From the IMG/VR virus record IMGVR_UViG_3300046005_000547, positions 1-64,000 of that record: a stretch of 64,000 bases of DNA; one strand, written 5' to 3'. Numbering within the stretch: position 1 is the stretch's first letter; each line of letters begins with the position of its first letter. The notes beneath the pieces are model-generated. The model saw only the letters and a list, made by a program, of their open reading frames with translations, searched no databases and had not been told where the DNA came from. Shown one piece after another: positions 413-63,575 of this stretch. Both the position numbers and the translations under genes were made by a program.

Positions 413-1795
413 TTATTTATGAATAATACAATTATGCGTAGCTCTACTACAAGCCACATAAAAACTTCTTAATGATTCTTCTTTGTTATGATTACAGAAA
501 ATGTCTTTGGCATGAACTATAACATTTGAATAAGTGGAACCCTGAGAACGATGAGAAGTAATACAATACACTTGTCGAATATCTGTAAAGTGTTTTTGTA
601 CAAGATAGAACAATTCCCAGTTGATTCCAAACATATTAGTTCTAGCACATGTTGACATAAATTCAGTCAACATCTTCAATTCATTCTTATCTGCTGGAAT
701 AACAAATGAATGTCTCGATTTGTCTGATAATTTACATGTAACTAGATATCTCCTGACAACATGTTTAGTAAATATCCATCCTTTGGATATTTGTCTCTGA
801 TTTGGTTCATATACAAATGGTTCGATTTCCTCTAAGGATACAATACTCGCTTCTGTTTCAGTTGGGCAGATAATCTTATCCCATCCTTCATACATGATTT
901 GATTCTTATTGAATTCGACAAATGTACTCACAGTATGCATCGGTTTAGAGAACGCAAAATGTTCACCAATTGCAAATGGTTTGTCCAAATTGGGATACCT
1001 AATCTTCTGTATAGTTTCATTGAACCAATCAACTGTCTTATTACGCCAAGCAATTACTCTAATTAAATCAGGATCTGAATCAAACTTTGGATCTGTAAAT
1101 GCATGGTAGATAATGTTCATCATTTCATGATTATCAACTTCATGAACTCCGATATCTCCAATTTCATTGGTCTTTGTTTCAACTGCAGGCATCTTGTATA
1201 CATTATTATCTAATTGATGCCTAATGGTTGTACACAAATCAAGAATCGGATTACCATGTTTCTGTCTGATGACTTCAGTTAGATAGATCTTATTGTCGAT
1301 ATTAAATGTAGGAGATTCAGTTTCATTCACTGGATTCAACTGATTGTTATCTCCCATGAATATAACTTTGGCATTAGATGAGAACATAACGCCTTTGTTA
1401 ATGTAATCAAACAATTCCGAATCAACCATGGACATCTCATCACAGACCACCAAATCAAATTTATCAAATGATGAATTACCACTTGGTGTCAATTTCTCCT
1501 CACCATTTCTATTGATTTTCATTGTCAAACCGAGTAGTGAATGTATCGTTTTACATTCAACATTTAGTCCTCGTTTGATTGACATATTCTTTAGAACTTT
1601 GGTTGCCTTATTAGTGGGAGAGGTAAAACAAATCTTTAATCCTTCTGGTAAATAGTCAAGGAACTCAACAATGACTGAACTTTTACCAGAACCCGCTGGT
1701 CCAATTAAACAAATGTAATCTTCACGCTTGTTACCAACAAACTCCACTAGATTACCGATTGCTCTATTCTGTTGTGATGTTAATACAATTTTCAT
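413..1795 (-). CDS. dda: Dda-like SF1B DNA helicase
   Basis: GPAGSGKS Walker A, SPTNKA, DEMSMVD, GDNNQLNPV, ITSHRSQGSTY, YVACSRA helicase motifs. Confidence 0.92.
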   Translation of the reverse strand: MKIVLTSQQNRAIGNLVEFVGNKREDYICLIGPAGSGKSSVIVEFLDYLPEGLKICFTSPTNKATKVLKNMSIKRGLNVECKTIHSLLGLTMKINRNGEEKLTPSGNSSFDKFDLVVCDEMSMVDSELFDYINKGVMFSSNAKVIFMGDNNQLNPVNETESPTFNIDNKIYLTEVIRQKHGNPILDLCTTIRHQLDNNVYKMPAVETKTNEIGDIGVHEVDNHEMMNIIYHAFTDPKFDSDPDLIRVIAWRNKTVDWFNETIQKIRYPNLDKPFAIGEHFAFSKPMHTVSTFVEFNKNQIMYEGWDKIICPTETEASIVSLEEIEPFVYEPNQRQISKGWIFTKHVVRRYLVTCKLSDKSRHSFVIPADKNELKMLTEFMSTCARTNMFGINWELFYLVQKHFTDIRQVYCITSHRSQGSTYSNVIVHAKDIFCNHNKEESLRSFYVACSRATHNCIIHK

Positions 1796-1796
1796 A

Positions 1797-2219
1797 TTAT
1801 GGTAAACTTACAAAAATATCGAATGTATATTCAGCAGATTCAACTATAATCTTCTGGGTTCCTAATTTTGCTATATGTTTACCTTTTGGTAAAATTGTTA
1901 TAATGAATAGATGTTTGTTCAATGAATTTGATATTTTCTTATCCACTTTAAAATCACAAACAATCCCGACTTGTTTGCTATTTGAATAGAATAAAAATGC
2001 CGCCGTTTTTTTATCTTTAAATTCATTTTCATGTAAAGACAACCATTCTATACCTTGATTCAATGTTTCTTTTATTTCATCGTCTGAAATATCTCTTTCA
2101 ATTTTTCGTTCGTTAGAATGTGATGTATTATAAACAAAAATTGTTCGTCTATTCATTGTTGATGTCAAAAATGCATTTCTTTCTGCAAGAAATTCTTTAA
2201 ATGTTTTAATAGAATTCAC
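1797..2219 (-). CDS. candidate internal head protein, DUF4258/RNase-toxin-like fold
   Basis: N-terminus MNSIKTFKEFLAE resembles the T4 capsid targeting sequence; HSNERKIERDISDDEI and IITIL segments recall DUF4258-like proteins. Confidence 0.4.
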   Translation of the reverse strand: MNSIKTFKEFLAERNAFLTSTMNRRTIFVYNTSHSNERKIERDISDDEIKETLNQGIEWLSLHENEFKDKKTAAFLFYSNSKQVGIVCDFKVDKKISNSLNKHLFIITILPKGKHIAKLGTQKIIVESAEYTFDIFVSLP

Positions 2220-2483: not shown

Positions 2484-2882
2484 CTAAAATAAAGATATTT
2501 TATTTTTATGTTCTAACCATTTATTACGTAATTCCCATAATACAGTTGCCTGACAATTGTTTCCTTCCTTACCAAATATATCAGACAACCCTGAATACTT
2601 TGTTAATTCGTCCAGTAGATAAGGATTCTCCTTGATATATTCAATCCATAAACTTCTATACAATTTTGTACATTCATCCATATTGACAATCTTATGATGT
2701 TTCTGATAAGATTTACATTCCTTTGGTTCTAAACCTGTTACTCCATCATCAAACACTTTAGATGCTTGGTAAATGTTCTCAATTGTATTATGTCTTGATT
2801 TAATGTAAGCAAAGAACGCCGAGAATCGTTTATTTCCTTTGGATGAACATTCCAAGAAGGGGTCTTCTCCGTGTCTAACCAT
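2484..2882 (-). CDS. conserved phage protein, possibly NADAR-like
   Basis: SSKGNKRFSAF...IENIYQASKVF motif; the family assignment is weak. Confidence 0.35.
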   Translation of the reverse strand: MVRHGEDPFLECSSKGNKRFSAFFAYIKSRHNTIENIYQASKVFDDGVTGLEPKECKSYQKHHKIVNMDECTKLYRSLWIEYIKENPYLLDELTKYSGLSDIFGKEGNNCQATVLWELRNKWLEHKNKISLF

Positions 2883-3123
2883 GAATCATCCTTTGTCTAT
2901 ATTTGATTTCTCGATTAACCCAAAATTCAGCAGTTGAACCTAATACATGTTCTAATCTAACTGCCACATTGTATGTTATAGGAACTTCTCCTGATAACAA
3001 TAAACAAATAGAATCATACTGTATTTCCATCAATCTAGCAAACTCTTTATCGTCTATTCCTTTTTCATTGAGTAAATCTTTAATTGTATCTGATGGTGGA
3101 GAATTGTAATCTGGTGTAAACAT
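2875..3123 (-). CDS. HigA-like HTH antitoxin/regulator
   Basis: FTPDYNSPPSDTIKDLL...GEVPITYNVAVRLEHVLGSTAEFW follows the HigA pattern; likely start MFTPDY. Confidence 0.8.
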   Translation of the reverse strand: MFTPDYNSPPSDTIKDLLNEKGIDDKEFARLMEIQYDSICLLLSGEVPITYNVAVRLEHVLGSTAEFWVNREIKYRQRMIHG

Positions 3124-3177
3124 ATAAATCCTAAGCAAATAAAAACCGATATGAACTTAATCATATCGGTTTGGTAA

Positions 3178-4656
3178 TTATAATGATTTGTTGACGAGTT
3201 GTCTAATTTCAGCCAACGTTGTTTCCTTGACCAATTTTCCATCTTTGAATACAACTTCTAAACATCCATGTTTTTCTTGTTTTGCATCAACGTCGTCATT
3301 CAATGTATATTGTCCATTTTCATGAGATACCATCAACAATCCTTTGGCAGATTTTTTGGTTCCATCAGAATCCGTTTTTGGGTCTTTGAAAATTGGTTTA
3401 CCAACTCCATTAACCTTGACGTATGTGGACTTAAACGCAATTCCGAAACTATCTCTTGAGACCATTCCGTAAGTGTACGATCCTACTCCAAATACAATAT
3501 TGTTGGACGCAAATCCTTTTTCCATCAATTTTCGTAGGATAGTGTCCTGACGTTCTAATGTAATTGAATCACCATAGATTGCTCCGATATGTGGGTCTAA
3601 TTCTTTATATCCTTTTGAATTAATTGTACCACCGAATGTTTCCCATAAACATTCAATCAATCCTTTTTGTTCTGGAGATCTACCATTCAATACAGAATAT
3701 GTTCCGCAGATAATATCAACAGGATCCCCCGAATCTGGGCGGATTGTAAGTTTCCCGTTACGATTCATGATTGTATCTTTTAATGCGGGTAGATACTCCG
3801 TAACTAATTGCCAGAAGTCCCACGAATCGGAAACCATTGAGAAGATTCCATCTGGATAAACATCTTCAATTAAATGACGGATTGATTCCAATTCATTTTC
3901 AACTCCGTAAGAAGTCTGGGTACTATGTTCCGAGGCGGGAACCGAGCAACCAACCAATTCTTCATCGATGTTTGCTCCATAATAATCTTCAGCCAATTCA
4001 ATAGCTGGTAATGTATCAGTACCAACAGAACCCATTGCCAATACAGCAAACCCAGATACAGCAGCAGATTGTCTATTCTGCATACCTCTCATACTAAAAT
4101 CATGATTCTGAAATGGAACAAACGAATTATCATTACATGTTAATTCTGAATACTTCAAACTGGTTTTCTTGAATTCCATGTAACGTGTTGCCGAAGCGAT
4201 TCCAAGCCACATTTCACAACTCAATACAGTTTCAATGTAATTAGTCAACCAGAAGAACTCTGGGATATTATTGATTACAGTCAACAAAGGAACTTTAAAA
4301 GGAACAAACGAACCCTCTGGTAATGCTTTGATTGTGATTGGCAAATATCCCAAATCATGTAATACTCCGATATGCGATACATCAACATCAGAATTCAACA
4401 TTTTATCAACAAATCGTTTGTATCGTTTTACGACTTGGTCTCTTGGTTTAGAAAAGAATGATGTATTCCATTCATCAATTAGATATTCCTTTACAAAATG
4501 TTGTAATCCAACAAAATAAACACCTTTACAATCTTTGATTCCTGAATGTTTACCAGAACGAGCGGTGAAGTTTGAATAAACGACTTCCGTACCTTGGATG
4601 TATTGTTTGATGTGTCCTAATTTATAAGCATCTGTTTGTAATAATGCGTTGTTCAT
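3178..4656 (-). CDS. nadV: nicotinamide phosphoribosyltransferase family (Nampt/NadV; Namat-like)
   Basis: TDAYKLGH, DFSMRG, SEHS, VSDSWD, IRPDSGDP, IYGDSIT, FGVGS motifs. Confidence 0.93.
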   Translation of the reverse strand: MNNALLQTDAYKLGHIKQYIQGTEVVYSNFTARSGKHSGIKDCKGVYFVGLQHFVKEYLIDEWNTSFFSKPRDQVVKRYKRFVDKMLNSDVDVSHIGVLHDLGYLPITIKALPEGSFVPFKVPLLTVINNIPEFFWLTNYIETVLSCEMWLGIASATRYMEFKKTSLKYSELTCNDNSFVPFQNHDFSMRGMQNRQSAAVSGFAVLAMGSVGTDTLPAIELAEDYYGANIDEELVGCSVPASEHSTQTSYGVENELESIRHLIEDVYPDGIFSMVSDSWDFWQLVTEYLPALKDTIMNRNGKLTIRPDSGDPVDIICGTYSVLNGRSPEQKGLIECLWETFGGTINSKGYKELDPHIGAIYGDSITLERQDTILRKLMEKGFASNNIVFGVGSYTYGMVSRDSFGIAFKSTYVKVNGVGKPIFKDPKTDSDGTKKSAKGLLMVSHENGQYTLNDDVDAKQEKHGCLEVVFKDGKLVKETTLAEIRQLVNKSL

Positions 4657-5098
4657 TTTACTGTTCCTTATTGTTGTGTTAAATTTGTTGAAACTTTGTA
4701 TTTTGGATTTACAATAGATTCTTTGATTCGATTGTATTCATCTAATGAAATTTGATTCGTTTTACCTTCTGATGTATGTAATGTAAAACTGTTACGAGAA
4801 ATCATATACACAATAATAGAAGGTTCTGACGAATCCTCGTCAAATTCAAATCCTTCAATTTTAGAATCTTTTAATACCAATGTTTTTGTTTTACAGTTAA
4901 ACGTTCTCATGATTTATTTCCTTTGTTTATTAAAAATGTGTTTTAGATTTCGATAACAAATTAAGAATGTCTACGTTTTTAATGGTTTCAACGCCAAACA
5001 ACGGTTGATTTAATTCAACTTTCTTAATTGGTTCATTCTTATTATCGTCTATCTTTTTGTAATAGTCAAGACATTCTTTAAATGTTATTGTATCCATT

Positions 5099-5491
5099 TT
5101 ACTTTCCTCGAACTTTTAATACCAATGATTTACACATTTCAAAAGTATATGCTAAACCAGCTCGATCGTCAAGTAAAACATTGAAGAATGGTTTTCTTGT
5201 TTTAAACAAAGGAGATTCATTAACGTAATCGGGAACAATACCAATTGATTTACAATATTCAACAGCTTCCTGCAATTCATTCCCTTCTCTACATGTAAAC
5301 AGAATCAACTTACAATTAATTGATTTGAGATCATGTAACAATTTAACCATCTCAGGAAACGTATCCCCTAATCCATGTACATCATAAATTGTATTGTCGA
5401 AATCGAATCCAATGTATAATGAACCATGTTTTTTATATTCTTCCAATAATCGTTGGAACGCCGTTGTATCGCTTAAAAATCTATCTTGCAT
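5099..5491 (-). CDS. HAD-superfamily hydrolase
   Basis: FDFDNT motif I, LFTCRE, LLDDRA; likely start MQDRFL with GGAG upstream. Confidence 0.75.
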   Translation of the reverse strand: MQDRFLSDTTAFQRLLEEYKKHGSLYIGFDFDNTIYDVHGLGDTFPEMVKLLHDLKSINCKLILFTCREGNELQEAVEYCKSIGIVPDYVNESPLFKTRKPFFNVLLDDRAGLAYTFEMCKSLVLKVRGK

Positions 5492-5492
5492 A

Positions 5493-5702
5493 TTATACTC
5501 CGAAAACATCATTAACAAATAAACGAGGATCTTCATTTTCATCATCATAGAACGAATTTGTTGTGATAATTAAATCAATACCATCATCAAACAATACATC
5601 TAATCCTTTTGAGAAGATTCCATGTGTTGCGTACAAATACACTTTACCAACATTACGTTGTTTCAACACTTTGACAATTTCTTGGAAGGTTCTACCACCG
5701 TC
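5493..5702 (-). pseudogene. stranded original 3' end of prs (69 codons, no start codon)
   Basis: Translates DGGRTFQEIVKVLKQRNVGKVYLYATHGIFSKGLDVLFDDGIDLIITTNSF...*; 34 of 51 residues identical to the C-terminus of ORF 6688-7542. Confidence 0.9.
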
Positions 5703-5745
5703 GTATTAAATAATTTTATCATAATTTATATAAAAGGAAAAAGTA

Positions 5746-6687
5746 ATGGAAAATTTAAAAGATTTTTTATATCAACAATTATCATCCAAATCTAAAAATA
5801 ATTTTTACACTAAGCGATATATCAATTTCATGATTTCTAGAAACGATAAACCAAAAAATGTATATACGGAATTGCATCATATTTTACCAAAAGCGAAAAC
5901 TCAATTTCCAGAATATAAAAATCTTGTAAAATACCCTTGGAATGGGATCGAATTAACTGGACAAGAACATTTTATAGCACATTGGTTATTATGGAAATCG
6001 CAAGGCGGTTTTATGGCATACGCATTTATTGGTATGAGAAGGTGTAATGATTATCAAACTGATAGATATTTTAAAATTAATGGAAAATCGTACGAAAAAT
6101 TAAAAGAAGATGCATCTGCTGCGCAATCTAATAGAATAATTTTAGAATCCACCAGACAAAAGATTTCCATATCAAATAAATCTAGACCAAAAGGTGTGTG
6201 TCCTCATTGTAATATAGAAATGGATATTTCTAATTTAAAAAAATACCATTTAGATAATTGTAAAGTTTTTACTGGTAAATTGGTTCATGATATTAAACAA
6301 AATTTAGAAATAGGGAATTGTCCTCATTGTGGATTAGAAGGTAAAATGCAAGGATTATTGGCAACCCATTTTGACCATTGTCCAAAAATAAATAATTCTA
6401 GGAAAATAACTAAATTTTTTGATTGTCCTCATTGTAATAAAACTTTACCAGATACGCAAAATGTTAGAAATTTACATTTTGATAATTGTACTGTTTTCAC
6501 GGGTATTAAAAGAGAACCTAGTGATAAATTTAAAGCAGCAAATTCAAAAAGAGGTAAACCTGGGGTACCTAAACCAAAAATACAATGCCCTCATTGTAAT
6601 CATATAGGCACCCCAAAACGTATGTTACAAAATCATTTTGATAATTGCATTGCTAAAACAGATTCTAATTTAGATAATTTTATGTAA
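5746..6687 (+). mobile_element. free-standing HNH homing endonuclease with four CxxC-H-C Zn-finger repeats
   Basis: YTELHHILPK...EHFIAHWLLWK HNH domain; four CPHC...H(L/F)D(N/H)C repeats; inverted relative to neighbouring genes. Confidence 0.85.
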
Positions 6688-7542
6688 CTAATTAAAAATT
6701 TCAATAATATGCAATCTTTCATGGTTTGAATTTTCTATAAAAGAATTTGTCGTAATGATTTTACATATACCTGAATCTAAAATTGGAATGATTCCAATAT
6801 CAAAAATTCCATGAGTTACGTAAAGATATATTTTACCAACATTTCTTTGTGATAGAATTTTAGATATTTCGATAAAAGTTCTACCACCTGAACAGATGTC
6901 GTCTACAATCAATACGTCTTTACCATTGAAATCATCTCTATACACTTCTGTTCTGATGATATGACCGGACGAATCCCTTTCTTTATTTGCTTGGACAACA
7001 TCCAATGAAAGTTTAGATGCCAATTTGTAAATCTTTTTAGATGCACCAAAATCTGGCGATAATAACACTAGATTATCTAAATTGATTTTATCATCCAATT
7101 CATCAATACATTCAGAAGCAATTTGGTATTGTTCAATGTTGATAATGTTATCAAATAAAGCCAGAGATGTATCTGAATGTACATCAAATGTAACAATTCG
7201 ATTGTAATTTTGATTGTTGATTAAATCAGCAAACACTTTCAATGATAATGATTCGCCGTCGTCAGACACTTTATCTTGTCTAGCATACGGTAAATAAGGA
7301 GTGACCAATGTTAATGGTATCTTAGAACCATAATGTAATCTTAATGCGTTTGTTACCATCAACAATTCCATGATGTCATCAGATGATTTAAGTCTGGTCT
7401 GAATTTCAACTTCATATACATTTTTTGGAGTATTCTTCAATTGTACATGAACTTCTCCACCAGAGAATTTGAAGAAATTAACATCTTTCAATACTGCATT
7501 AGATGAATCATCTGTTAGAAAATTTAAACTTACGATACTCAT
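6688..7542 (-). CDS. prs: ribose-phosphate pyrophosphokinase family (Prs; Adps-like)
   Basis: FSGGEVHV, PYLPYARQD, FDVHS, SPDFGA, IVDDICSGGRT, VTHGIF. Confidence 0.92.
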   Translation of the reverse strand: MSIVSLNFLTDDSSNAVLKDVNFFKFSGGEVHVQLKNTPKNVYEVEIQTRLKSSDDIMELLMVTNALRLHYGSKIPLTLVTPYLPYARQDKVSDDGESLSLKVFADLINNQNYNRIVTFDVHSDTSLALFDNIINIEQYQIASECIDELDDKINLDNLVLLSPDFGASKKIYKLASKLSLDVVQANKERDSSGHIIRTEVYRDDFNGKDVLIVDDICSGGRTFIEISKILSQRNVGKIYLYVTHGIFDIGIIPILDSGICKIITTNSFIENSNHERLHIIEIFN

Positions 7543-7596
7543 ATATGTTCCTATAATGTAAAATTAAACAGCAAGGTAATTATAATGTAATTCTGT

Positions 7597-7637
7597 AAAA
7601 AGAAAATGGAATCTAAGACATAATCCTAGATTCCATT
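7597..7637 (-). terminator. intrinsic terminator after terD
   Basis: aatggaatcta/tagattccatt stem followed by a T-run on the minus strand. Confidence 0.7.
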
Positions 7638-7641
7638 CATA

Positions 7642-8217
7642 TTAGATATAGATACCAAATTGATTAGCCAACGCTTTCAATCCACCAGAATATCCTTGAC
7701 CAACTGCTTTGAATTTCCATTCATTATTGTATCGATAAACTTCGCCAAAAATCATGGCAGTCTCAGACGACGCACCTTCCGTTAAATCATAACGTAAGAT
7801 TTCAACGCCAGTGTCTTGGTTAATCAATCGAATATACGCATTATTGACTTGACCGAAGTTCTGACGACGTTGTTCTGCTTCATGGATTGTAACAGTAATA
7901 CTAAATTTATCAACATCTTTATGTGCGAGATTCAATTTGATTACAATTTGTTCATCATCTCCGTCACCAGAACCCGTTAGATTATCGCCAAGATGTTCTG
8001 TTGAACCATCAACTGATTTCAATTGATTATAGAAGATAAAATCCGAGTCAGAACGCGTCTTACCATTTGTCAATAAGAAAGCCGACGCATCCAAATCAAA
8101 CGGAGCCCCATCAGTTGTTCTGGCATCCCAACCTAATCCAACAACGATATTGGTTAATGATGGATCGATTTTTGTTAAAGATAAGTTGTTACCTTTTGTT
8201 AATGTTAAAGATGTCAT
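7642..8217 (-). CDS. terD: TerD-family stress protein
   Basis: LGWD...FDLDASAF...FIFYNQ...[15 protein letters not shown]...WKFKAVGQG. Confidence 0.92.
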
Positions 8218-8226
8218 GATATATTC

Positions 8227-8964
8227 CTATAGATAAGATTTTGAAATTGTTGATACGATGTCGTTTAATGTTACATCGTTGGTTGAGTCACCGATTGCGT
8301 TGAATTTCCATTCATTGTTATGTTTATACAATTTACCAAGAATCATTGAAACTTTATTTTTAAATGTATCGTCTTTAGAGATGTTATAACCGGCAAGAAC
8401 GAAATCTACTCTAGACGGTGTTCCTTCATAGATTCTAATTGACGCAAAAGGAATGTCATTGAATTTTTGACCTCTGTAAGAATTCAATACAACAAAGATT
8501 TGGTCAACATCTGGTTTCAATTCGTTTAATTTAATTGAGATGATTTCATTATCTAATCCATCATCTCCGTTTGAATCACCAACTAAATCATCACCAGAAT
8601 GTGTAATTCCTTTACCTCTTAGATTACCAAAATAGATTAGTTCATCTTTCACTTTGTTTTTAAATGTAATACAACTTACATCTAAATCAACAGCTGTTCT
8701 TCCAATCATACCCCAATTCACGCCAACGCAGATATTGGTTAAAGATTTTCCATCTTTTTCTAATGTAATACGTTGTCCTTTAACCAATGTCAATTTTGGT
8801 TGAACTTGTTGTTTCTGTTTTTCCTGTAGAGCAGCTTTTGTTGCTTCAACAGATGTTTCAATGTTATCGATAACATTTCTAATTGTATTAAAAATACTCA
8901 TGTTCGGATTCTCCGGATTTAAAATTTTGATAAAACAGACGTCATGTTGAATGTAAATTCGCAT
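8227..8964 (-). CDS. TerD/TerZ-like protein with N-terminal coiled coil
   Basis: GVNWG, DLDVSC, GDDLVGDSNGDDGLDNEII, WKFNAIG; probable start at 8901 (MSIFN). Confidence 0.85.
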   Translation of the reverse strand: MRIYIQHDVCFIKILNPENPNMSIFNTIRNVIDNIETSVEATKAALQEKQKQQVQPKLTLVKGQRITLEKDGKSLTNICVGVNWGMIGRTAVDLDVSCITFKNKVKDELIYFGNLRGKGITHSGDDLVGDSNGDDGLDNEIISIKLNELKPDVDQIFVVLNSYRGQKFNDIPFASIRIYEGTPSRVDFVLAGYNISKDDTFKNKVSMILGKLYKHNNEWKFNAIGDSTNDVTLNDIVSTISKSYL

Positions 8965-10871: not shown

Positions 10872-11423
10872 TTATCTTTCATAATTTGTTACCTTATGGT
10901 CTGATTCAATAATCTCTAAAATTGAATCAACTGTTTTTGAAGAAACTATAATTGAATGAAACGATAACTCAGATTTCAATAACAAAGAATGAATATTGTC
11001 GTCAATCAACATTGCTTCTTCAACTGTTTGATTTCTACCATATTCTTGGAACCCATGATGTTCTAAATCTCGTTTCAAGAAGATTTCTGTATTATAAAAC
11101 AAATCATGTGCATCTTTAATCAATTCTTTCAGAATTGGCAAATCATAATCTTCTGAGATATAATTCAATTGCATCAACAATGGTGAATCTGTAATTACAT
11201 AATCGACTTGGTCTTTGAGTCTTCTGATTTTAGATAATTGTTTGGCAAAGACGTATTCTTGATTATTTTTAAGAATGTTATGACGTTTGTCGTAAGTCAA
11301 ATCTTTTGCGTATTCAGATACAAGTTCAACTTTGTATCCTTTTGATTTCATCCGATAGAATAGACCAGCAGCCGTAGTTGATTTACCTGTACCTGGACCA
11401 CCGTATAAATTAATTATTTTCAT
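10872..11423 (-). CDS. P-loop kinase/ATPase (AAA_28, NadR-kinase-like)
   Basis: INLYGGPGTGKSTTAA, ELVSEYAKD, VITDSPLL, GRNQT. Confidence 0.7.
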   Translation of the reverse strand: MKIINLYGGPGTGKSTTAAGLFYRMKSKGYKVELVSEYAKDLTYDKRHNILKNNQEYVFAKQLSKIRRLKDQVDYVITDSPLLMQLNYISEDYDLPILKELIKDAHDLFYNTEIFLKRDLEHHGFQEYGRNQTVEEAMLIDDNIHSLLLKSELSFHSIIVSSKTVDSILEIIESDHKVTNYER

Positions 11424-62036: not shown

Positions 62037-63575
62037 ATGATTATCGGAATTACAGGACCTGTCGCATCAGGCAAATCAAAAGCGATTCAGATGTTGAAAT
62101 CAAGAAATGATACTACAATATCAGCAACATATCACGATTTAGATGAATATTGTAAATCATTTAATGTTGACAAAGTATCGTTCTTCCAGAAACATTTTAA
62201 TGTAGATACTATGTCAAAAGAAAGAATCATTAAAGAAGTGTTTTCAGACATGAAATTGTACAATGAATATTGTCAATTATTTGAAGAAGATTTAATTGAT
62301 TTGTTGAATCAATTTACAAATGGTATCCATATAGTGGAAGCATCTGCGTTGTTTTCATATCCGAATCTCATTAAGAAATTCGATAAGATTATCTGTATAG
62401 ATCCAAAATCAAATCATAAAGAAAACAAATCAAAACGTAAGATTGATACAACAATTTTTGACGACATCTATTGGAGAAATTATACATGTAATTCTTTGAA
62501 GAATGATTTGAATGACATAAGATTGGAAACGGGAACGTTAATGGAATTACGTTCAAAAATTGAACAAGCAATTATTTCCATTGTCGATGAAGAATCGTGT
62601 ATCAATGAATTGTTCAATACAATAAATCGGTGGGAAACATTTAAAGATTTATCTCATGGATATTCAACTAATCCGTATCATAATCTTGACCATACTCGTT
62701 CTGTATTAACGGATTTGTACTATCAAGATAATTACACAAGAACATTAGGCGAATTGACATTGTATCATGATTTCCAATACGATCCAAAATTGATTTGTAA
62801 TGAAGATTTAGCTTCCAATTTCATCAAGTATCATTCGGATTTAATTCATGAAGATGTAGACATCGATCTTCTATGTCGTTTAATAAGATCGACTGATTAT
62901 AAAGTTATTGACCCAAAGATTTCCAACTTCTTCCTTTCGGATATCTCTCATTGGATTAGAACAGATGAAGAAATCATCGAAGTTGAACAATTAATGTTTA
63001 AAGAGTATCAACATATTGATTGGGTTGATTACAGAGCAGGAAGAATTAAAATTTTAAATGGATTGATAGATAAGATAATTTCAACATATCCTACAACAAT
63101 TTCGTGTTCTTATATCAGAGGAATTGAATTATCAATTTCATGGTTGAATACATTTAATCCAAAAATTGGTTGGTTCTGTGGTTCATTTAATCCATTTACA
63201 ATTGGTCATATGGATGTATTAACTAAAGCAGAACGATTATTCGATAAGGTTGTTCTTGTACAAGGAGTGAATCCAAACAAAGATTCAAGTCAATTTAATC
63301 TGAATTCAACTAAAACATTGGTGAAATATGAACAACATTTAGATGTTAAATGTATTCCTGATTTGATTCAATCTGTTGGGTATCAACCAATTTTGATTAG
63401 AGGGATTAGAAATGTACAAGATTACAATGAATCAAGCGAATGGCATCAACAAATTAAAGAGTTTGTGTATGTTGATATGGTTCTGATTGATTCAGATTTA
63501 AGACATATTAGTTCATCGTTTGTCAGAGGAGCTGGTAAATTAAATTTGGACACCAAACGATTTATTGTAAAATAA
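62037..63575 (+). CDS. CoaE-like kinase / HD domain / CoaD-like nucleotidyltransferase fusion
   Basis: IIGITGPVASGKS; YHNLDH...LYHD...NE; GSFNPFTIGH (HxGH), IRGIRN, HISSS. Confidence 0.8.
   Translation: MIIGITGPVASGKSKAIQMLKSRNDTTISATYHDLDEYCKSFNVDKVSFFQKHFNVDTMSKERIIKEVFSDMKLYNEYCQLFEEDLIDLLNQFTNGIHIVEASALFSYPNLIKKFDKIICIDPKSNHKENKSKRKIDTTIFDDIYWRNYTCNSLKNDLNDIRLETGTLMELRSKIEQAIISIVDEESCINELFNTINRWETFKDLSHGYSTNPYHNLDHTRSVLTDLYYQDNYTRTLGELTLYHDFQYDPKLICNEDLASNFIKYHSDLIHEDVDIDLLCRLIRSTDYKVIDPKISNFFLSDISHWIRTDEEIIEVEQLMFKEYQHIDWVDYRAGRIKILNGLIDKIISTYPTTISCSYIRGIELSISWLNTFNPKIGWFCGSFNPFTIGHMDVLTKAERLFDKVVLVQGVNPNKDSSQFNLNSTKTLVKYEQHLDVKCIPDLIQSVGYQPILIRGIRNVQDYNESSEWHQQIKEFVYVDMVLIDSDLRHISSSFVRGAGKLNLDTKRFIVK

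What the first reader, a model, noticed from the sequence alone, without database searches (positions are those of the whole stretch)
3178..7542. Prs + Nampt operon resembling the NARP1 NAD-reconstitution anti-defence pathway
Seen: prs-like and nampt-like genes in one operon with a HAD hydrolase between them and no NMNAT nearby. Established: phage NARP1 uses a Prs-like Adps and a Nampt-like Namat to rebuild NAD+ from ADP-ribose, countering NAD-depleting defences (Thoeris, DSR, SIR2-HerA); NARP2 uses Nampt + NMNAT. Inference: this is NARP1-like. It has been invaded by a homing endonuclease that preserved the gene.
Basis: partly seen in the sequence, partly recalled or inferred. Interest (0 to 1): 0.6.

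Follow-up and report, generated by a model that had tools for sequence, protein, structure and literature searches.

The report
Phage NAD-rebuilding operon with extras
A lake-water jumbo phage carries a genuine NARP1 operon (the two enzymes that rebuild NAD+ after bacterial defences destroy it), with two additions: a small phosphatase gene that repeatedly travels with this pathway, and a selfish endonuclease cassette that swapped the tail of one enzyme gene at its active-site codon.

Summary
On the minus strand, between two terminator-like hairpins, lie a Prs-like gene (7542..6688), an antisense homing-endonuclease gene (5746..6687), a small HAD phosphatase (5491..5099), two tiny ORFs and a Nampt-like gene (4656..3178).

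Both enzymes pass the sequence tests for NARP1:
- The Nampt-like protein is 55-57% identical to characterised Namat and 36% to the NARP2 Nampt of KVP40. It carries the 11-residue Namat clamp motif.
- The Prs-like protein falls in the phage Adps clade and has the Adps PP-loop signature.
- No NMNAT or Macro domain was found in the 234.7-kb genome.

1. The endonuclease arrived as a cassette with its own replacement 3' end of adps. The native 3' end survives downstream as a relic (5702..5493).
2. The junction is the codon of a near-invariant PP-loop Asp, now Ser (TCA). An unrelated phage has the same architecture, and the sister phage has a mirror-image event in namat.
3. The HAD gene is a recurrent NARP1 companion that I found in no paper: 43 of 80 loci, 22 clusters, several gene orders.

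Its function, possibly an analogue of the Macro phosphatase Adpp, is inferred only.

The parts
6688..7542 (-). adps: Prs-like ADP-ribose pyrophosphokinase, 284 aa, a chimeric gene. The 5' part (7542..6892) is native. The 3' part from the Ser codon to the stop (6891..6688) is read as imported with the endonuclease gene.
   Evidence: Pfam and PHROG matches. It lies in the phage Adps clade with ICP1 Adps, separated from gammaproteobacterial Prs at SH-aLRT 100. The PP loop is DDICSGGRTF, against Adps DD[IL]CDGGxTF and canonical DDMIDTGGTL. Equivalents of F18, R87, H121, D161, K185, D212 and D213 are kept. It is 284 aa against 315 aa for E. coli Prs.
6889..6891 (-). TCA (Ser) codon replacing the near-invariant PP-loop Asp (ICP1 D216). 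It is the first codon of the imported module and the left junction of the cassette.
   Evidence: Among 114 close homologues the residue is Asp in 108 and Ser in 3. All Ser alleles use TCA, three base changes away from GAC/GAT. The intact and relic copies are aligned.
5746..6687 (+). Free-standing homing endonuclease gene (313 aa), antisense to the operon. Its stop codon directly abuts the adps stop codon.
   Evidence: phrog_655 at E 5e-34 and phrog_12434, HNH endonuclease. It has an HNH-like motif HHILPK...PWNG...EHFIAH and four CPHC-x-H[FL]D[NH]C zinc ribbons. It is 47-48% identical to endonucleases in the same position in L176 and L177.
5703..5745 (.). Right end of the cassette: 43 bp upstream of the endonuclease start, with no homology to adps.
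   Evidence: Sequence read. Homology to adps begins only at 5702.
5493..5702 (-). Relic of the native adps 3' end (69 codons plus stop). It starts exactly at the PP-loop Asp codon (DGGRTFQEIV...) and is still an open frame. Its stop lies one base before the HAD start, as in the endonuclease-free relative L006.
   Evidence: The relic is 67.6% identical to L006 Adps, the same as the native N-part (67.6%). The current C-part of the gene is 57.6% identical.
5099..5491 (-). Capless (C0) HAD-superfamily phosphatase, 130 aa, of the BT0820 family. PHROGs and RefSeq label this family 'phosphoheptose isomerase', against the HAD evidence here.
   Evidence: NCBIfam NF046079 at E 1.3e-9 and phrog_1238. Invariant D30, D32, T34, T66, K100, D108 and D109. 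AF2 pLDDT 95.4. Foldseek best match 2obb at E 6e-6, followed by weak HAD-fold matches (E 0.02-0.05): KdsC, the T4 PNKP phosphatase domain and phage AfhF, an arabinose-1,5-bisphosphate phosphatase. It is linked to Namat/Adps in 43 of 80 IMG/VR loci.
4930..5097 (-). orf55, unknown. It is conserved next to the HAD gene in L006 (43% identity).
4668..4910 (-). orf80, unknown. No homologue in L006.
3178..4656 (-). namat: nicotinamide ADP-ribose transferase (Nampt-like), 492 aa.
   Evidence: PDB 9W5X/9W5W (SpbetaL1 Namat) at E 3e-148 against mammalian Nampt at 4e-69. 55% identical to ICP1 Namat and 36% to KVP40 Nampt. Clamp motif GSYTYGMVSRD at residues 392-402 and the SCL stretch SGK-H. The catalytic blocks HDFSMRGM, GTDT, EHS and IRPDSGDP are identical to SpbetaL1.
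7604..7638 (-). Terminator-like hairpin (16-bp stem plus T run) between the TerD genes and adps.
3143..3172 (-). Terminator-like hairpin (12-bp stem plus T run) just after the namat stop codon.

Best explanation
This is a NARP1 NAD+-reconstitution operon of an uncultured lake-water jumbo phage.

**Pathway (inferred from homology).** Adps uses ATP to pyrophosphorylate ADP-ribose, the product of SIR2/TIR/SEFIR-type NADase defences, giving ADPR-PP. Namat joins ADPR-PP to nicotinamide to give NAD+ and PPi. This lets the phage replicate in cells whose defence has depleted NAD+.

**Endonuclease cassette (shown by comparative anatomy).** The adps gene carries a homing-endonuclease cassette of the kind known from fungal mitochondria as a 'mORF gene hybrid'. 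The cassette consists of a replacement 3' end of adps, starting with a Ser codon in place of the PP-loop Asp codon, and an antisense HNH-type endonuclease gene. It is inserted exactly at that Asp codon. The gene stays full length and the native 3' end is pushed downstream as an untranslated relic.

My inference for how it moves: the enzyme cuts the very conserved PP-loop coding sequence of naive adps alleles. Repair copies the cassette, using the 5' part of adps and the relic as the two homology arms. Insertion splits the target site, which protects the carrier.

**HAD phosphatase (association shown, function inferred).** The 130-aa HAD phosphatase is an accessory NARP1 enzyme that is conserved across many phage lineages. 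Its chemistry is not known. My best guess is that it removes a phosphate from ADPR-derived or pentose-phosphate species that Adps cannot use, such as ADPR-1''-phosphate or 2'-phospho-ADPR. That would make it a non-homologous counterpart of the Macro-domain Adpp of NARP1-AP.
For: **Namat identity**
- Best PDB matches are the SpbetaL1 Namat structures, at 497 bits against 236 bits for mammalian Nampt (PDB codes confirmed).
- 55% identical to ICP1 Namat and 36% to KVP40 Nampt.
- It has the 11-residue SCH motif described in PMC12774641.

**Adps identity**
- Clade with the verified ICP1 Adps and a Justusliebigvirus Adps.
- PP-loop signature DD[IL]C.GG.TF, shorter RF loop, conserved catalytic Lys, short C-terminus (PMC13586617).

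**Layout and genome content**
- The unit is bounded by terminator-like hairpins.
- No NMNAT and no Macro domain were found in the complete genome.

**Cassette**
- A relic sits at 5702..5493.
- Ser alleles are rare (3 of 114) and all use TCA.
- The independent lineage L177/L178, whose Adps is 45% identical, has the same order: adps(Ser), antisense endonuclease (47% identical), then a relic starting at the same Asp codon. L176 has the same endonuclease position, but its contig ends there.
- None of 118 Asp-type loci has an abutting endonuclease gene, Fisher p = 0.0008.
- Sister phage L006 has the mirror case in namat. Its 5' relic is 80% identical to the window's Namat, while its current N-part is 57.5% identical, p = 9e-6.
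- The arrangement is identical in lake metagenomes from 2016 to 2025.

**HAD**
- The motifs are intact.
- 43 of 80 family loci lie directly beside Namat/Adps, in 22 clusters at 70% identity and at least four gene orders.
- It also sits beside the NARP1 genes in Bacillus Wphvirus, Aeromonas PhAER-3, crAss-like DAC15 and Tenacibaculum PTm1.
- NARP linkage is spread over the whole HAD tree.
Against: - No enzyme activity, expression or anti-defence phenotype was measured.
- The Asp replaced by Ser corresponds to ICP1 D216, which the structural paper lists among the conserved substrate-recognition residues. Adps could therefore be weakened.
- Namat clamp position 7 is Met rather than the usual Tyr/Phe, and T398 is Ser.
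- The Prs outgroup in the tree was only gammaproteobacterial. 'Adps clade' therefore rests on nesting with verified Adps and on motifs, not on a broad Prs phylogeny.
- For the window alone, the relic-versus-import identity difference is not significant (46/68 against 38/66, p = 0.28). The argument leans on L006, L177 and the shared TCA codon.
- The HAD family also occurs in phages without any Namat: 4 of 5 non-linked genomes checked, and one clade of 25 non-linked loci. Its chemistry need not be specific to ADPR.
Confidence: 0.72

Rival explanations
1. This is an ordinary PRPP-based salvage module. The Prs-like enzyme makes PRPP, the Nampt-like enzyme makes NMN, and a host NMN adenylyltransferase finishes NAD+. 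That would be a NARP2-like route without a phage NMNAT.
For: Both proteins pass generic family thresholds: TIGR01251 at 173 bits and PRK09198 at 536 bits. Namat retains about half of Nampt's PRPP activity in vitro (PMC12774641). Clamp position 7 is not aromatic.
Against: The Nampt-like protein is 36% identical to the NARP2 Nampt and 55-57% to verified Namat. It carries the Namat clamp motif, not GGGLLQQLDRD. The Prs-like protein fails every Prs equivalog cut-off and has the Adps PP loop, RF loop and short C-terminus. No phage NMNAT was found. In published surveys 94% of NARP2-type Nampt phages encode an Nmnat.
Confidence: 0.08
2. The endonuclease invasion damaged the pathway. The Asp-to-Ser change in the PP loop cripples Adps, so the operon is decaying or only Namat still works.
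For: The position is Asp in 108 of 114 homologues, in all 37 other phage sequences aligned and in all canonical Prs aligned. The Adps structure paper lists D216 among the conserved substrate-recognition and phosphate-coordinating residues.
Against: Ser alleles are full-length open frames in four lineages that are only 34-49% identical to each other. That is hard to reconcile with dead genes. All other catalytic residues are intact. The locus is sequence-identical in samples taken years apart. In type I phosphoribosyltransferases generally this position is not fixed as Asp; this last point is from my own knowledge and was not tested here.
Confidence: 0.15
3. The cluster is part of a Ter-type stress or superinfection system. 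A phosphoribosyltransferase and a HAD phosphoesterase make a nucleoside-like signal that the two adjacent TerD proteins sense.
For: Two TerD genes flank the operon here and in L006, and a TerD-like hit lies near the NARP1+HAD locus L073. Iyer et al. 2021 describe Ter systems with PRTases, HAD enzymes and TerD in jumbo phages (PMC7824862).
Against: A strong terminator-like hairpin separates TerD from adps. The TerD pair sits on opposite sides of the operon in the two sister phages. 40 of 43 HAD+NARP1 loci have no TerD within 6 kb. The two enzymes are specifically Adps and Namat, not generic nucleobase PRTases.
Confidence: 0.04
4. Other roles for the HAD enzyme: (a) an inorganic pyrophosphatase that pulls the Namat reaction forward; (b) a nucleotidase that destroys a defence trigger such as m6dAMP, the activator of Metis, whose NAD+ cleavage NARP1 cannot repair; (c) a general nucleotide phosphatase with no tie to NAD+.
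For: The family occurs in phages without Namat, and one database source calls a member a 5'-nucleotidase. MisB, a HAD phosphatase, dephosphorylates m6dAMP (10.1101/2025.11.05.686725). PPi is a product of Namat.
Against: The tight adjacency is kept through at least four gene orders in 22 clusters. The HAD-fold structural matches act on sugar phosphates or nucleic-acid ends (KdsC, AfhF, T4 PNKP), but apart from BT0820 they are weak. No HAD+NARP1 operon also carries a Macro phosphatase: 0 of 43 in the operon with PF01661, where about 15% is expected, P about 0.03 for 22 independent clusters.
Confidence: 0.3

Closest known systems
NARP1 (Adps + Namat) of phages Bas63, SpbetaL1 and ICP1 (Osterman et al. 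2024; PMC12774641; PMC13586617)
   Same: A two-enzyme pair in one unit. The Namat clamp motif, the Adps PP-loop, RF-loop and hairpin features, and the absence of an NMNAT all match. Identity is 46-57% to characterised members.
   Different: The two genes are 2 kb apart, not adjacent. Between them lie an endonuclease cassette, a gene relic, a HAD phosphatase and two small ORFs. The PP-loop Asp is Ser, and clamp position 7 is Met.
NARP1-AP (Adps, Macro-domain Adpp, Namat) of Vibrio phage Gary (10.64898/2026.01.28.702374)
   Same: A three-gene layout with a phosphatase gene between, or beside, adps and namat. The phosphatase is a recurrent accessory of the pathway.
   Different: The phosphatase here has a HAD fold, not a Macro domain, so it is not homologous. 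Its substrate is unknown. No Macro domain was found in this genome.
NARP2 (Nampt + Nmnat) of Vibrio phage KVP40
   Same: A Nampt-family enzyme used for NAD+ restoration.
   Different: Only 36% identity. KVP40 has the GGGLLQQLDRD motif instead of the aromatic clamp. This genome has no Nmnat, and it does have an Adps.
Fungal mitochondrial mORF gene hybrids (Allomyces macrogynus atp6; Glomus atp6, atp9, cox2, nad3; PMC3630166)
   Same: A mobile endonuclease ORF travels with a foreign C-terminal gene segment that replaces the resident one. The native C-terminus stays downstream as an unexpressed duplicate, and the native copy resembles close relatives more than the inserted one does.
   Different: The host is a phage anti-defence gene rather than a mitochondrial respiratory gene. 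The enzyme is HNH-type with zinc-ribbon repeats rather than LAGLIDADG or GIY-YIG, and its ORF is antisense. The insertion point is an active-site codon. A mirror-image 5' version exists in the sister phage.
Free-standing Seg/Mob endonucleases of T4-like phages, 'intronless homing' (PMC2988022)
   Same: A free-standing HNH-type gene with a separate C-terminal DNA-binding region lies beside the target gene. Flanking sequence is co-converted, giving chimeric genes.
   Different: T4 elements replace flanking markers without leaving a duplicate. Here the displaced native end is retained each time, and I propose that it serves as the second homology arm.
BT0820-family capless HAD phosphatases (PDB 2obb) and phage AfhF arabinose-1,5-bisphosphate phosphatase (9iqw)
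   Same: The fold, about 130 aa, no cap domain and all four HAD motifs.
   Different: About 30% identity to BT0820, whose own substrate is unknown. The match to AfhF is weak (Foldseek E 0.05, 17% identity). There is no evidence that the substrate is shared with either.

Membership tests
NARP1: Namat | Closer to characterised Namat than to PRPP-specific Nampt | tested here: met
   497 bits to SpbetaL1 Namat (9W5X/9W5W) against 236 bits to mammalian Nampt. 55% identity to ICP1 Namat against 36% to KVP40 Nampt.
NARP1: Namat | [quoted passage not shown] | tested here: inconclusive
   The window has GSYTYGMVSRD. Length and positions 1-5 fit, position 3 is Tyr, and R-D is kept. Position 7 is Met (also seen in L037; Leu in L044) and T is replaced by S. 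KVP40 has GGGLLQQLDRD.
NARP1: Namat | SCL loop supplies a stacking residue: the third residue is R, K or Y, and if it is K or Y the fourth residue stacks | tested here: inconclusive
   The window has ...RSGK-HSG..., aligned with ICP1 ...RHGK-YSN.... Lys followed by His fits the pattern, but the loop was not modelled with ligand.
NARP1: Namat | Nampt-like catalytic core (F189, R192, D215, catalytic His, R306, D308) | tested here: met
   The blocks HDFSMRGM, GTDT, EHS and IRPDSGDP are identical to SpbetaL1 Namat in the HMMER alignment.
NARP1: Adps | Member of the phage Adps clade, separate from cellular Prs | tested here: met
   All 38 phage sequences, including verified ICP1 Adps, separate from 6 gammaproteobacterial Prs at SH-aLRT 100. 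Caveat: the outgroup is narrow. The protein fails all Prs equivalog cut-offs.
NARP1: Adps | Remodelled PP loop (ICP1 C215-S220; DDIC-D-x-x-x-[ST]-F) and Phe lid, in place of canonical DDMIDTGGTL | tested here: inconclusive
   The window has DDICSGGRTF. The Cys and Phe of Adps are present, but the Asp (D216) is Ser.
NARP1: Adps | Catalytic Lys185 and acceptor-site residues F18, R87, H121, D161, D212, D213 | tested here: met
   All are conserved in the alignment. F92 is variable across the family.
NARP1: Adps | Loss of the C-terminal alpha11-alpha12 regulatory module (about 280 aa) | tested here: met
   284 aa against 315 aa for E. coli Prs; ICP1 Adps is 280 aa.
NARP1 | adps and namat in close proximity in one unit | tested here: met
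   Same strand, 2 kb apart, bounded by terminator-like hairpins. In the relative L006 adps and HAD are contiguous.
NARP1 | ADPR + ATP gives ADPR-PP; ADPR-PP + nicotinamide gives NAD+; rescue from NADase defences | not testable with these tools
   Needs biochemistry and infection assays.
NARP1-AP | Macro-domain ADPR-1''-phosphate phosphatase (Adpp) in the operon | tested here: not met
   No PF01661 match in the genome, with a working control. PF14519 gave no match, but its control also failed to ring. The phosphatase present has a HAD fold.
NARP2 | PRPP-type Nampt together with a phage Nmnat | tested here: not met
   The single CTP_transf_like domain in 234.7 kb is PPAT-like. The Nampt-like protein is of Namat type.
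HAD superfamily phosphatase | Motifs I (DxDxT), II (S/T), III (K) and IV (DD) on a Rossmann-like fold | tested here: met
   Invariant D30, D32, T34, T66, K100, D108 and D109 in 28 sequences. AF2 pLDDT 95.4. Best PDB match 2obb, then weak matches to other HAD folds.
mORF-type endonuclease gene hybrid | Endonuclease ORF, plus an inserted foreign gene terminus in frame with the host gene, plus the displaced native terminus downstream | tested here: met
   The same architecture recurs in L177/L178, and the mirror image in L006 namat.
HNH homing endonuclease | HNH (beta-beta-alpha-Me) catalytic motif; site-specific cleavage of the endonuclease-free allele | tested here: inconclusive
   PHROG families 655 and 12434 match and an HH..P...N...H..H motif is present. 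No Pfam HNH model passed. Cleavage cannot be tested here.

The most novel reading that the evidence does not exclude
The 130-aa capless HAD phosphatase is a dedicated third enzyme of many NARP1 operons. It would be a convergent, non-Macro counterpart of Adpp that returns phosphorylated ADP-ribose species to the Adps substrate pool: ADPR-1''-phosphate from RES-type NADases, 2'-phospho-ADPR from NADP+ cleavage, or breakdown products of ADPR-PP. That would widen the range of NAD+-depleting defences the phage can beat. Separately, adps and namat are homing sites for a phage version of the fungal-mitochondrial mORF element, which inserts at an active-site codon and brings its own replacement gene end.
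Probability: 0.3. Interest if true: 0.75.

Novelty: new variant of a known kind. Interest (0 to 1): 0.58.

Why it matters
NARP1 is an established and common phage counter-defence, so one more copy would be routine. Two things go beyond that.

1. A small HAD phosphatase is tied to NARP1 in at least 22 sequence clusters from very different phages: crAss-like, Bacillus Herelleviridae, Aeromonas and Tenacibaculum phages, and jumbo phages. RefSeq and PHROGs label it 'phosphoheptose isomerase', against the HAD evidence here, and none of the papers I could search mentions it with NARP1. After the discovery that a Macro phosphatase extends NARP1 against RES-type defences, a second, unrelated phosphatase in the same position is a directly testable lead. 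It may point to another round of the NAD+ arms race.

2. The locus shows, in several independent cases, how a homing endonuclease can colonise the most conserved active-site codon of an anti-defence gene without destroying it, by carrying a spare gene end. This produces chimeric anti-defence genes. It also brings to phages an element type that I found described only in fungal mitochondria.

Tried and rejected
- **Megablast of the locus against isolated phages:** no match. The Dda-like helicase is at most 30% identical to any isolate. Phage taxon and host therefore remain unknown.
- **PDB sequence search with Adps:** found only canonical Prs. The ICP1 Adps structures are not in the copy.
- **Genome-contig scan with E. 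coli Prs:** returned only gammaproteobacterial Prs, so the tree has a narrow outgroup.
- **Macro_2 (PF14519) searches:** no positive control rang, so they are uninformative. I could not fetch Vibrio phage Gary as a control because its accession is not in the text.
- **Laying contigs of four lake runs:** I looked for an endonuclease-free allele. There were no joints, only identical pieces. No RNA run holds the locus.
- **Promoter scan:** at chance level.
- **Atlas, Pfam and PHROG searches of orf80 and orf55:** nothing usable.
- **Paper searches for 'partial duplication' with homing endonuclease:** irrelevant hits.
- **512-aa ORF with a CTP_transf_like domain as a hidden NMNAT:** considered and rejected, because it is PPAT-like.
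- **In-situ tandem duplication as the origin of the relic:** considered and rejected. The non-functional copy is the one that looks native, and the same junction recurs in an unrelated lineage.

The large representative-protein search and complex prediction were not used. No claim here rests on absence of relatives or on protein binding.

Full report
**1. What is there**

The window is the first 64 kb of a 234,735-bp virus record with direct terminal repeats, judged complete. It has about 30% G+C. It comes from lake-water metagenomes and has no close isolate.

Reading the minus strand from 9.0 kb down to 2.4 kb, the genes are:

| Position | Feature |
|---|---|
| 8964..8227 and 8217..7642 | two TerD genes |
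| 7638..7604 | terminator-like hairpin |
| 7542..6688 | Prs-like gene, 284 aa |
| 5746..6687 (plus strand) | 313-aa homing-endonuclease gene; its stop codon abuts the Prs-like stop |
| 5702..5493 | 70-codon fragment that repeats the 3' end of the Prs-like gene |
| 5491..5099 | HAD phosphatase, 130 aa |
| 5097..4930 | orf55 |
| 4910..4668 | orf80 |
| 4656..3178 | Nampt-like gene, 492 aa |
| 3172..3143 | terminator-like hairpin |
| 3138..2875 | HTH protein |
| 2882..2484 | NADAR protein |

The two hairpins bracket exactly the finding's coordinates. The only corrections are the HAD start and the unnoticed relic.

**2. Are the two enzymes NARP1 enzymes?**

*Published criteria.* Osterman et al. showed that Adps forms a phage clade apart from Prs, and that Namat and NARP2-type Nampt form separate clades. 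PMC12774641 defined the Namat 'selectivity clamp', an 11-residue motif GS-X-phi-X-phi-X-phi-TRD plus a variable loop. PMC13586617 defined the Adps donor site from the ICP1 enzyme: PP loop C215-S220, K185, and loss of the C-terminal helices.

*Nampt-like protein.*
- Its best solved relatives are the SpbetaL1 Namat structures 9W5X/9W5W, at E 3e-148, against 4e-69 for mammalian Nampt.
- It is 55% identical to ICP1 Namat and 36% to KVP40 Nampt.
- In an alignment of 41 sequences it carries GSYTYGMVSRD. All NARP1-linked proteins there have GS[YF][TSA][YFL]x[YFLM]x[TS]RD, and KVP40 has GGGLLQQLDRD.
- The catalytic blocks are identical to SpbetaL1.
- Deviations: Met at clamp position 7, and Ser for Thr.

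*Prs-like protein.*
- It is 46-47% identical to Justusliebigvirus Adps and about 31% to E. coli Prs.
- It groups with ICP1 and Bas61 Adps, away from six gammaproteobacterial Prs.
- It shares DD[IL]C.GG.TF, the shorter RF loop, the hairpin Lys and the short length.

*Genome content.* No NMNAT was found; the one CTP_transf_like domain is PPAT-like. No Macro domain was found.

On sequence criteria this is NARP1, not NARP2. The chemistry itself is inferred.

**3. The endonuclease cassette**

*The relic.* The fragment at 5702..5493 reads DGGRTFQEIV... through to a stop codon. It aligns with the last 67 residues of the intact gene. Homology starts exactly at the PP-loop Asp codon (GAC). At that point the intact gene has TCA, Ser.

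*The relic is the native end.*
- It is 67.6% identical to the Adps of the sister phage L006, the same value as the native N-part.
- The gene's present C-part is 57.6% identical.
- The relic's stop sits one base before the HAD start, exactly as the adps stop does in L006, where no endonuclease intervenes.
- On its own this identity difference is not significant (p = 0.28).

Three further results make the case.

1. *Ser is rare and shares one codon.* Ser at this position occurs in 3 of 114 close homologues. All Ser alleles use TCA, three substitutions away from GAC/GAT, and share a GIFD[IFY]G signature. Asp alleles and both relics have GIFS[KR]G.

2. *The architecture recurs in an unrelated phage.* L177/L178 has an Adps only 45% identical to the window's. 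It has the same order: adps(Ser), antisense endonuclease (47% identical), then a relic beginning at the same Asp codon (DGGATF...), followed by namat. L176 also has the endonuclease in the same position, but its contig ends there. None of 118 Asp-type loci has an abutting endonuclease gene, p = 0.0008. Two Ser lineages, L175 and L180, lack the endonuclease. They may have lost it.

3. *Sister phage L006 carries the mirror image in namat.*
   - The order is a 5' relic of about 160 codons, a related endonuclease (its N-terminal 80 residues are 51% identical), then a full namat.
   - The relic is 80.3% identical to the window's Namat.
   - The current N-part is 57.5% identical and the rest of the gene 70.5%, p = 9e-6.

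*The enzyme.* It has an HNH-like motif and four CPHC...HFDNC zinc ribbons; the L176 enzyme has five.

*Precedents.* The layout is that of fungal mitochondrial mORF gene hybrids (PMC3630166). It also fits the logic of free-standing phage endonucleases (PMC2988022).

*Proposed mechanism (inferred).*
- The enzyme recognises the conserved PP-loop coding sequence.
- Insertion splits that site.
- The relic of a donor is homologous to the 3' end of a naive recipient, so it can serve as the second recombination arm.

This would explain why a native-looking relic with the same boundary appears after each event.

*Stability.* The allele is identical in short contigs from three other lake or freshwater runs dated 2016-2025, and no endonuclease-free joint was seen.

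**4. The HAD phosphatase**

*What it is.*
- The family alignment keeps all four HAD motifs.
- The model is confident.
- It is closest to BT0820, a capless HAD of unknown substrate.
- Other capless HADs follow only as weak matches (Foldseek E 0.02-0.05): KdsC, the T4 PNKP phosphatase domain and the phage arabinose-1,5-bisphosphate phosphatase AfhF.

*Where it occurs.*
- Of the 80 best family loci in IMG/VR, 43 have a Namat homologue beside the HAD gene, usually within tens of bases.
- Those checked at lower stringency also have an Adps.
- The 43 loci fall into 22 clusters at 70% identity.

| Gene order | Loci |
|---|---|
| Namat-HAD-Adps | 22 |
| Namat-HAD (Adps below the tblastn threshold) | 9 |
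| Adps-HAD-Namat | 10 |
| Namat-Adps-HAD | 2 |

(Counts.)

- Isolated phages show the same linkage: Bacillus Wphvirus NotTheCreek (Adps-Namat-HAD), Aeromonas PhAER-3, crAss-like DAC15 and Tenacibaculum PTm1.
- On the HAD tree the NARP-linked state covers most of the diversity. Most unlinked cases form one clade of 25.
- Four of five unlinked genomes have no Namat at all, so the family is not exclusive to NARP1.
- No HAD+NARP1 operon has a PF01661 Macro domain. One hit in 43 records lies 80 kb away in a provirus record. The published background is 15%, giving P about 0.03 for 22 clusters. This is suggestive only, because the published survey used more sensitive HHpred detection.

*Literature.* The only paper in the library holding both 'NARP1' and 'haloacid dehalogenase' concerns an unrelated HAD. 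The aRES paper mentions no HAD.

*Reading.* I take the HAD as an accessory NARP1 enzyme. A role like Adpp is my best guess, at about 0.3-0.4. Pyrophosphatase or signal-nucleotidase roles remain open.

**5. Verdict**

The locus is a true member of NARP1 by sequence criteria, and NARP1 is a known system. It is a new variant in two respects: the recurrent HAD accessory gene, and the mORF-like cassette at the active-site codon of adps. The open risk is whether the Ser-type Adps is fully active.

Noticed in passing
window 2484-2882 (-) and 2875-3138 (-): Just downstream of namat lie an HTH protein (phrog_1381/2439) and a NADAR-domain protein (PF22397, the DarT1-associated NADAR antitoxin family, E 7e-11). 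NADAR enzymes remove ADP-ribose from guanine, so this may be an anti-DarT counter-defence beside the NAD+ operon. L006 keeps an 81%-identical copy nearby.
   Followed up: partly
window 7642-8217 (-) and 8227-8964 (-): Two tandem TerD-domain genes flank the operon. In the sister phage L006 the same pair lies on the other side of the operon, and a TerD-like hit lies near the NARP1+HAD locus L073. Possibly a Ter-type module; function unknown.
   Followed up: partly
L006 7491-10767 (IMGVR_UViG_3300046008_000242): In the sister jumbo phage the namat gene, not adps, carries a related endonuclease cassette, in mirror image: a native 5' relic (186-aa ORF), a 421-aa endonuclease on the same strand, then a chimeric full-length namat.
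   Followed up: yes
window 62037-63575 (+): A 512-aa ORF has an N-terminal P-loop hint and a C-terminal nucleotidyltransferase domain closest to phosphopantetheine adenylyltransferase (CoaD; PDB 3nd5, E 4e-9). It is the only CTP_transf_like domain in the genome and is probably not an NMNAT. Its substrate is unknown.
   Followed up: partly
window 10872-11423 (-): A 183-aa P-loop kinase with an AAA_28 match (E 5.5e-12; from my own knowledge, not checked here, the domain family of the NadR ribosylnicotinamide kinase). PHROGs calls the family thymidylate kinase. It could be a nucleoside or nucleotide kinase relevant to NAD+ or dNTP salvage.
   Followed up: no
window 5099-5548 (-); RefSeq phage records such as NC_031049 gp068: Members of this HAD family are annotated 'phosphoheptose isomerase' in PHROGs (phrog_1238) and in many RefSeq phage records. 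The motifs and the fold say HAD phosphatase. The mechanical 149-aa ORF here is over-extended into the relic.
   Followed up: yes
L175 4001-8129 and L180 504-3686: Two further Ser-type (TCA) adps alleles have no endonuclease and no relic, and both have the HAD gene. They may be descendants that lost the endonuclease and remain immune to it.
   Followed up: partly
window 1797-2219 (-) and 413-1795 (-): A DUF4258-like 140-aa ORF (weak, E 2.5e-4) and a Dda-like SF1 helicase lie downstream of the NADAR gene.
   Followed up: no
window 2800-8200: One lake-water run holds the whole stretch in a single contig at word depth of about 980, so the phage was abundant there. Runs from other studies (2016, 2024, 2025) hold identical short pieces.
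   Followed up: partly
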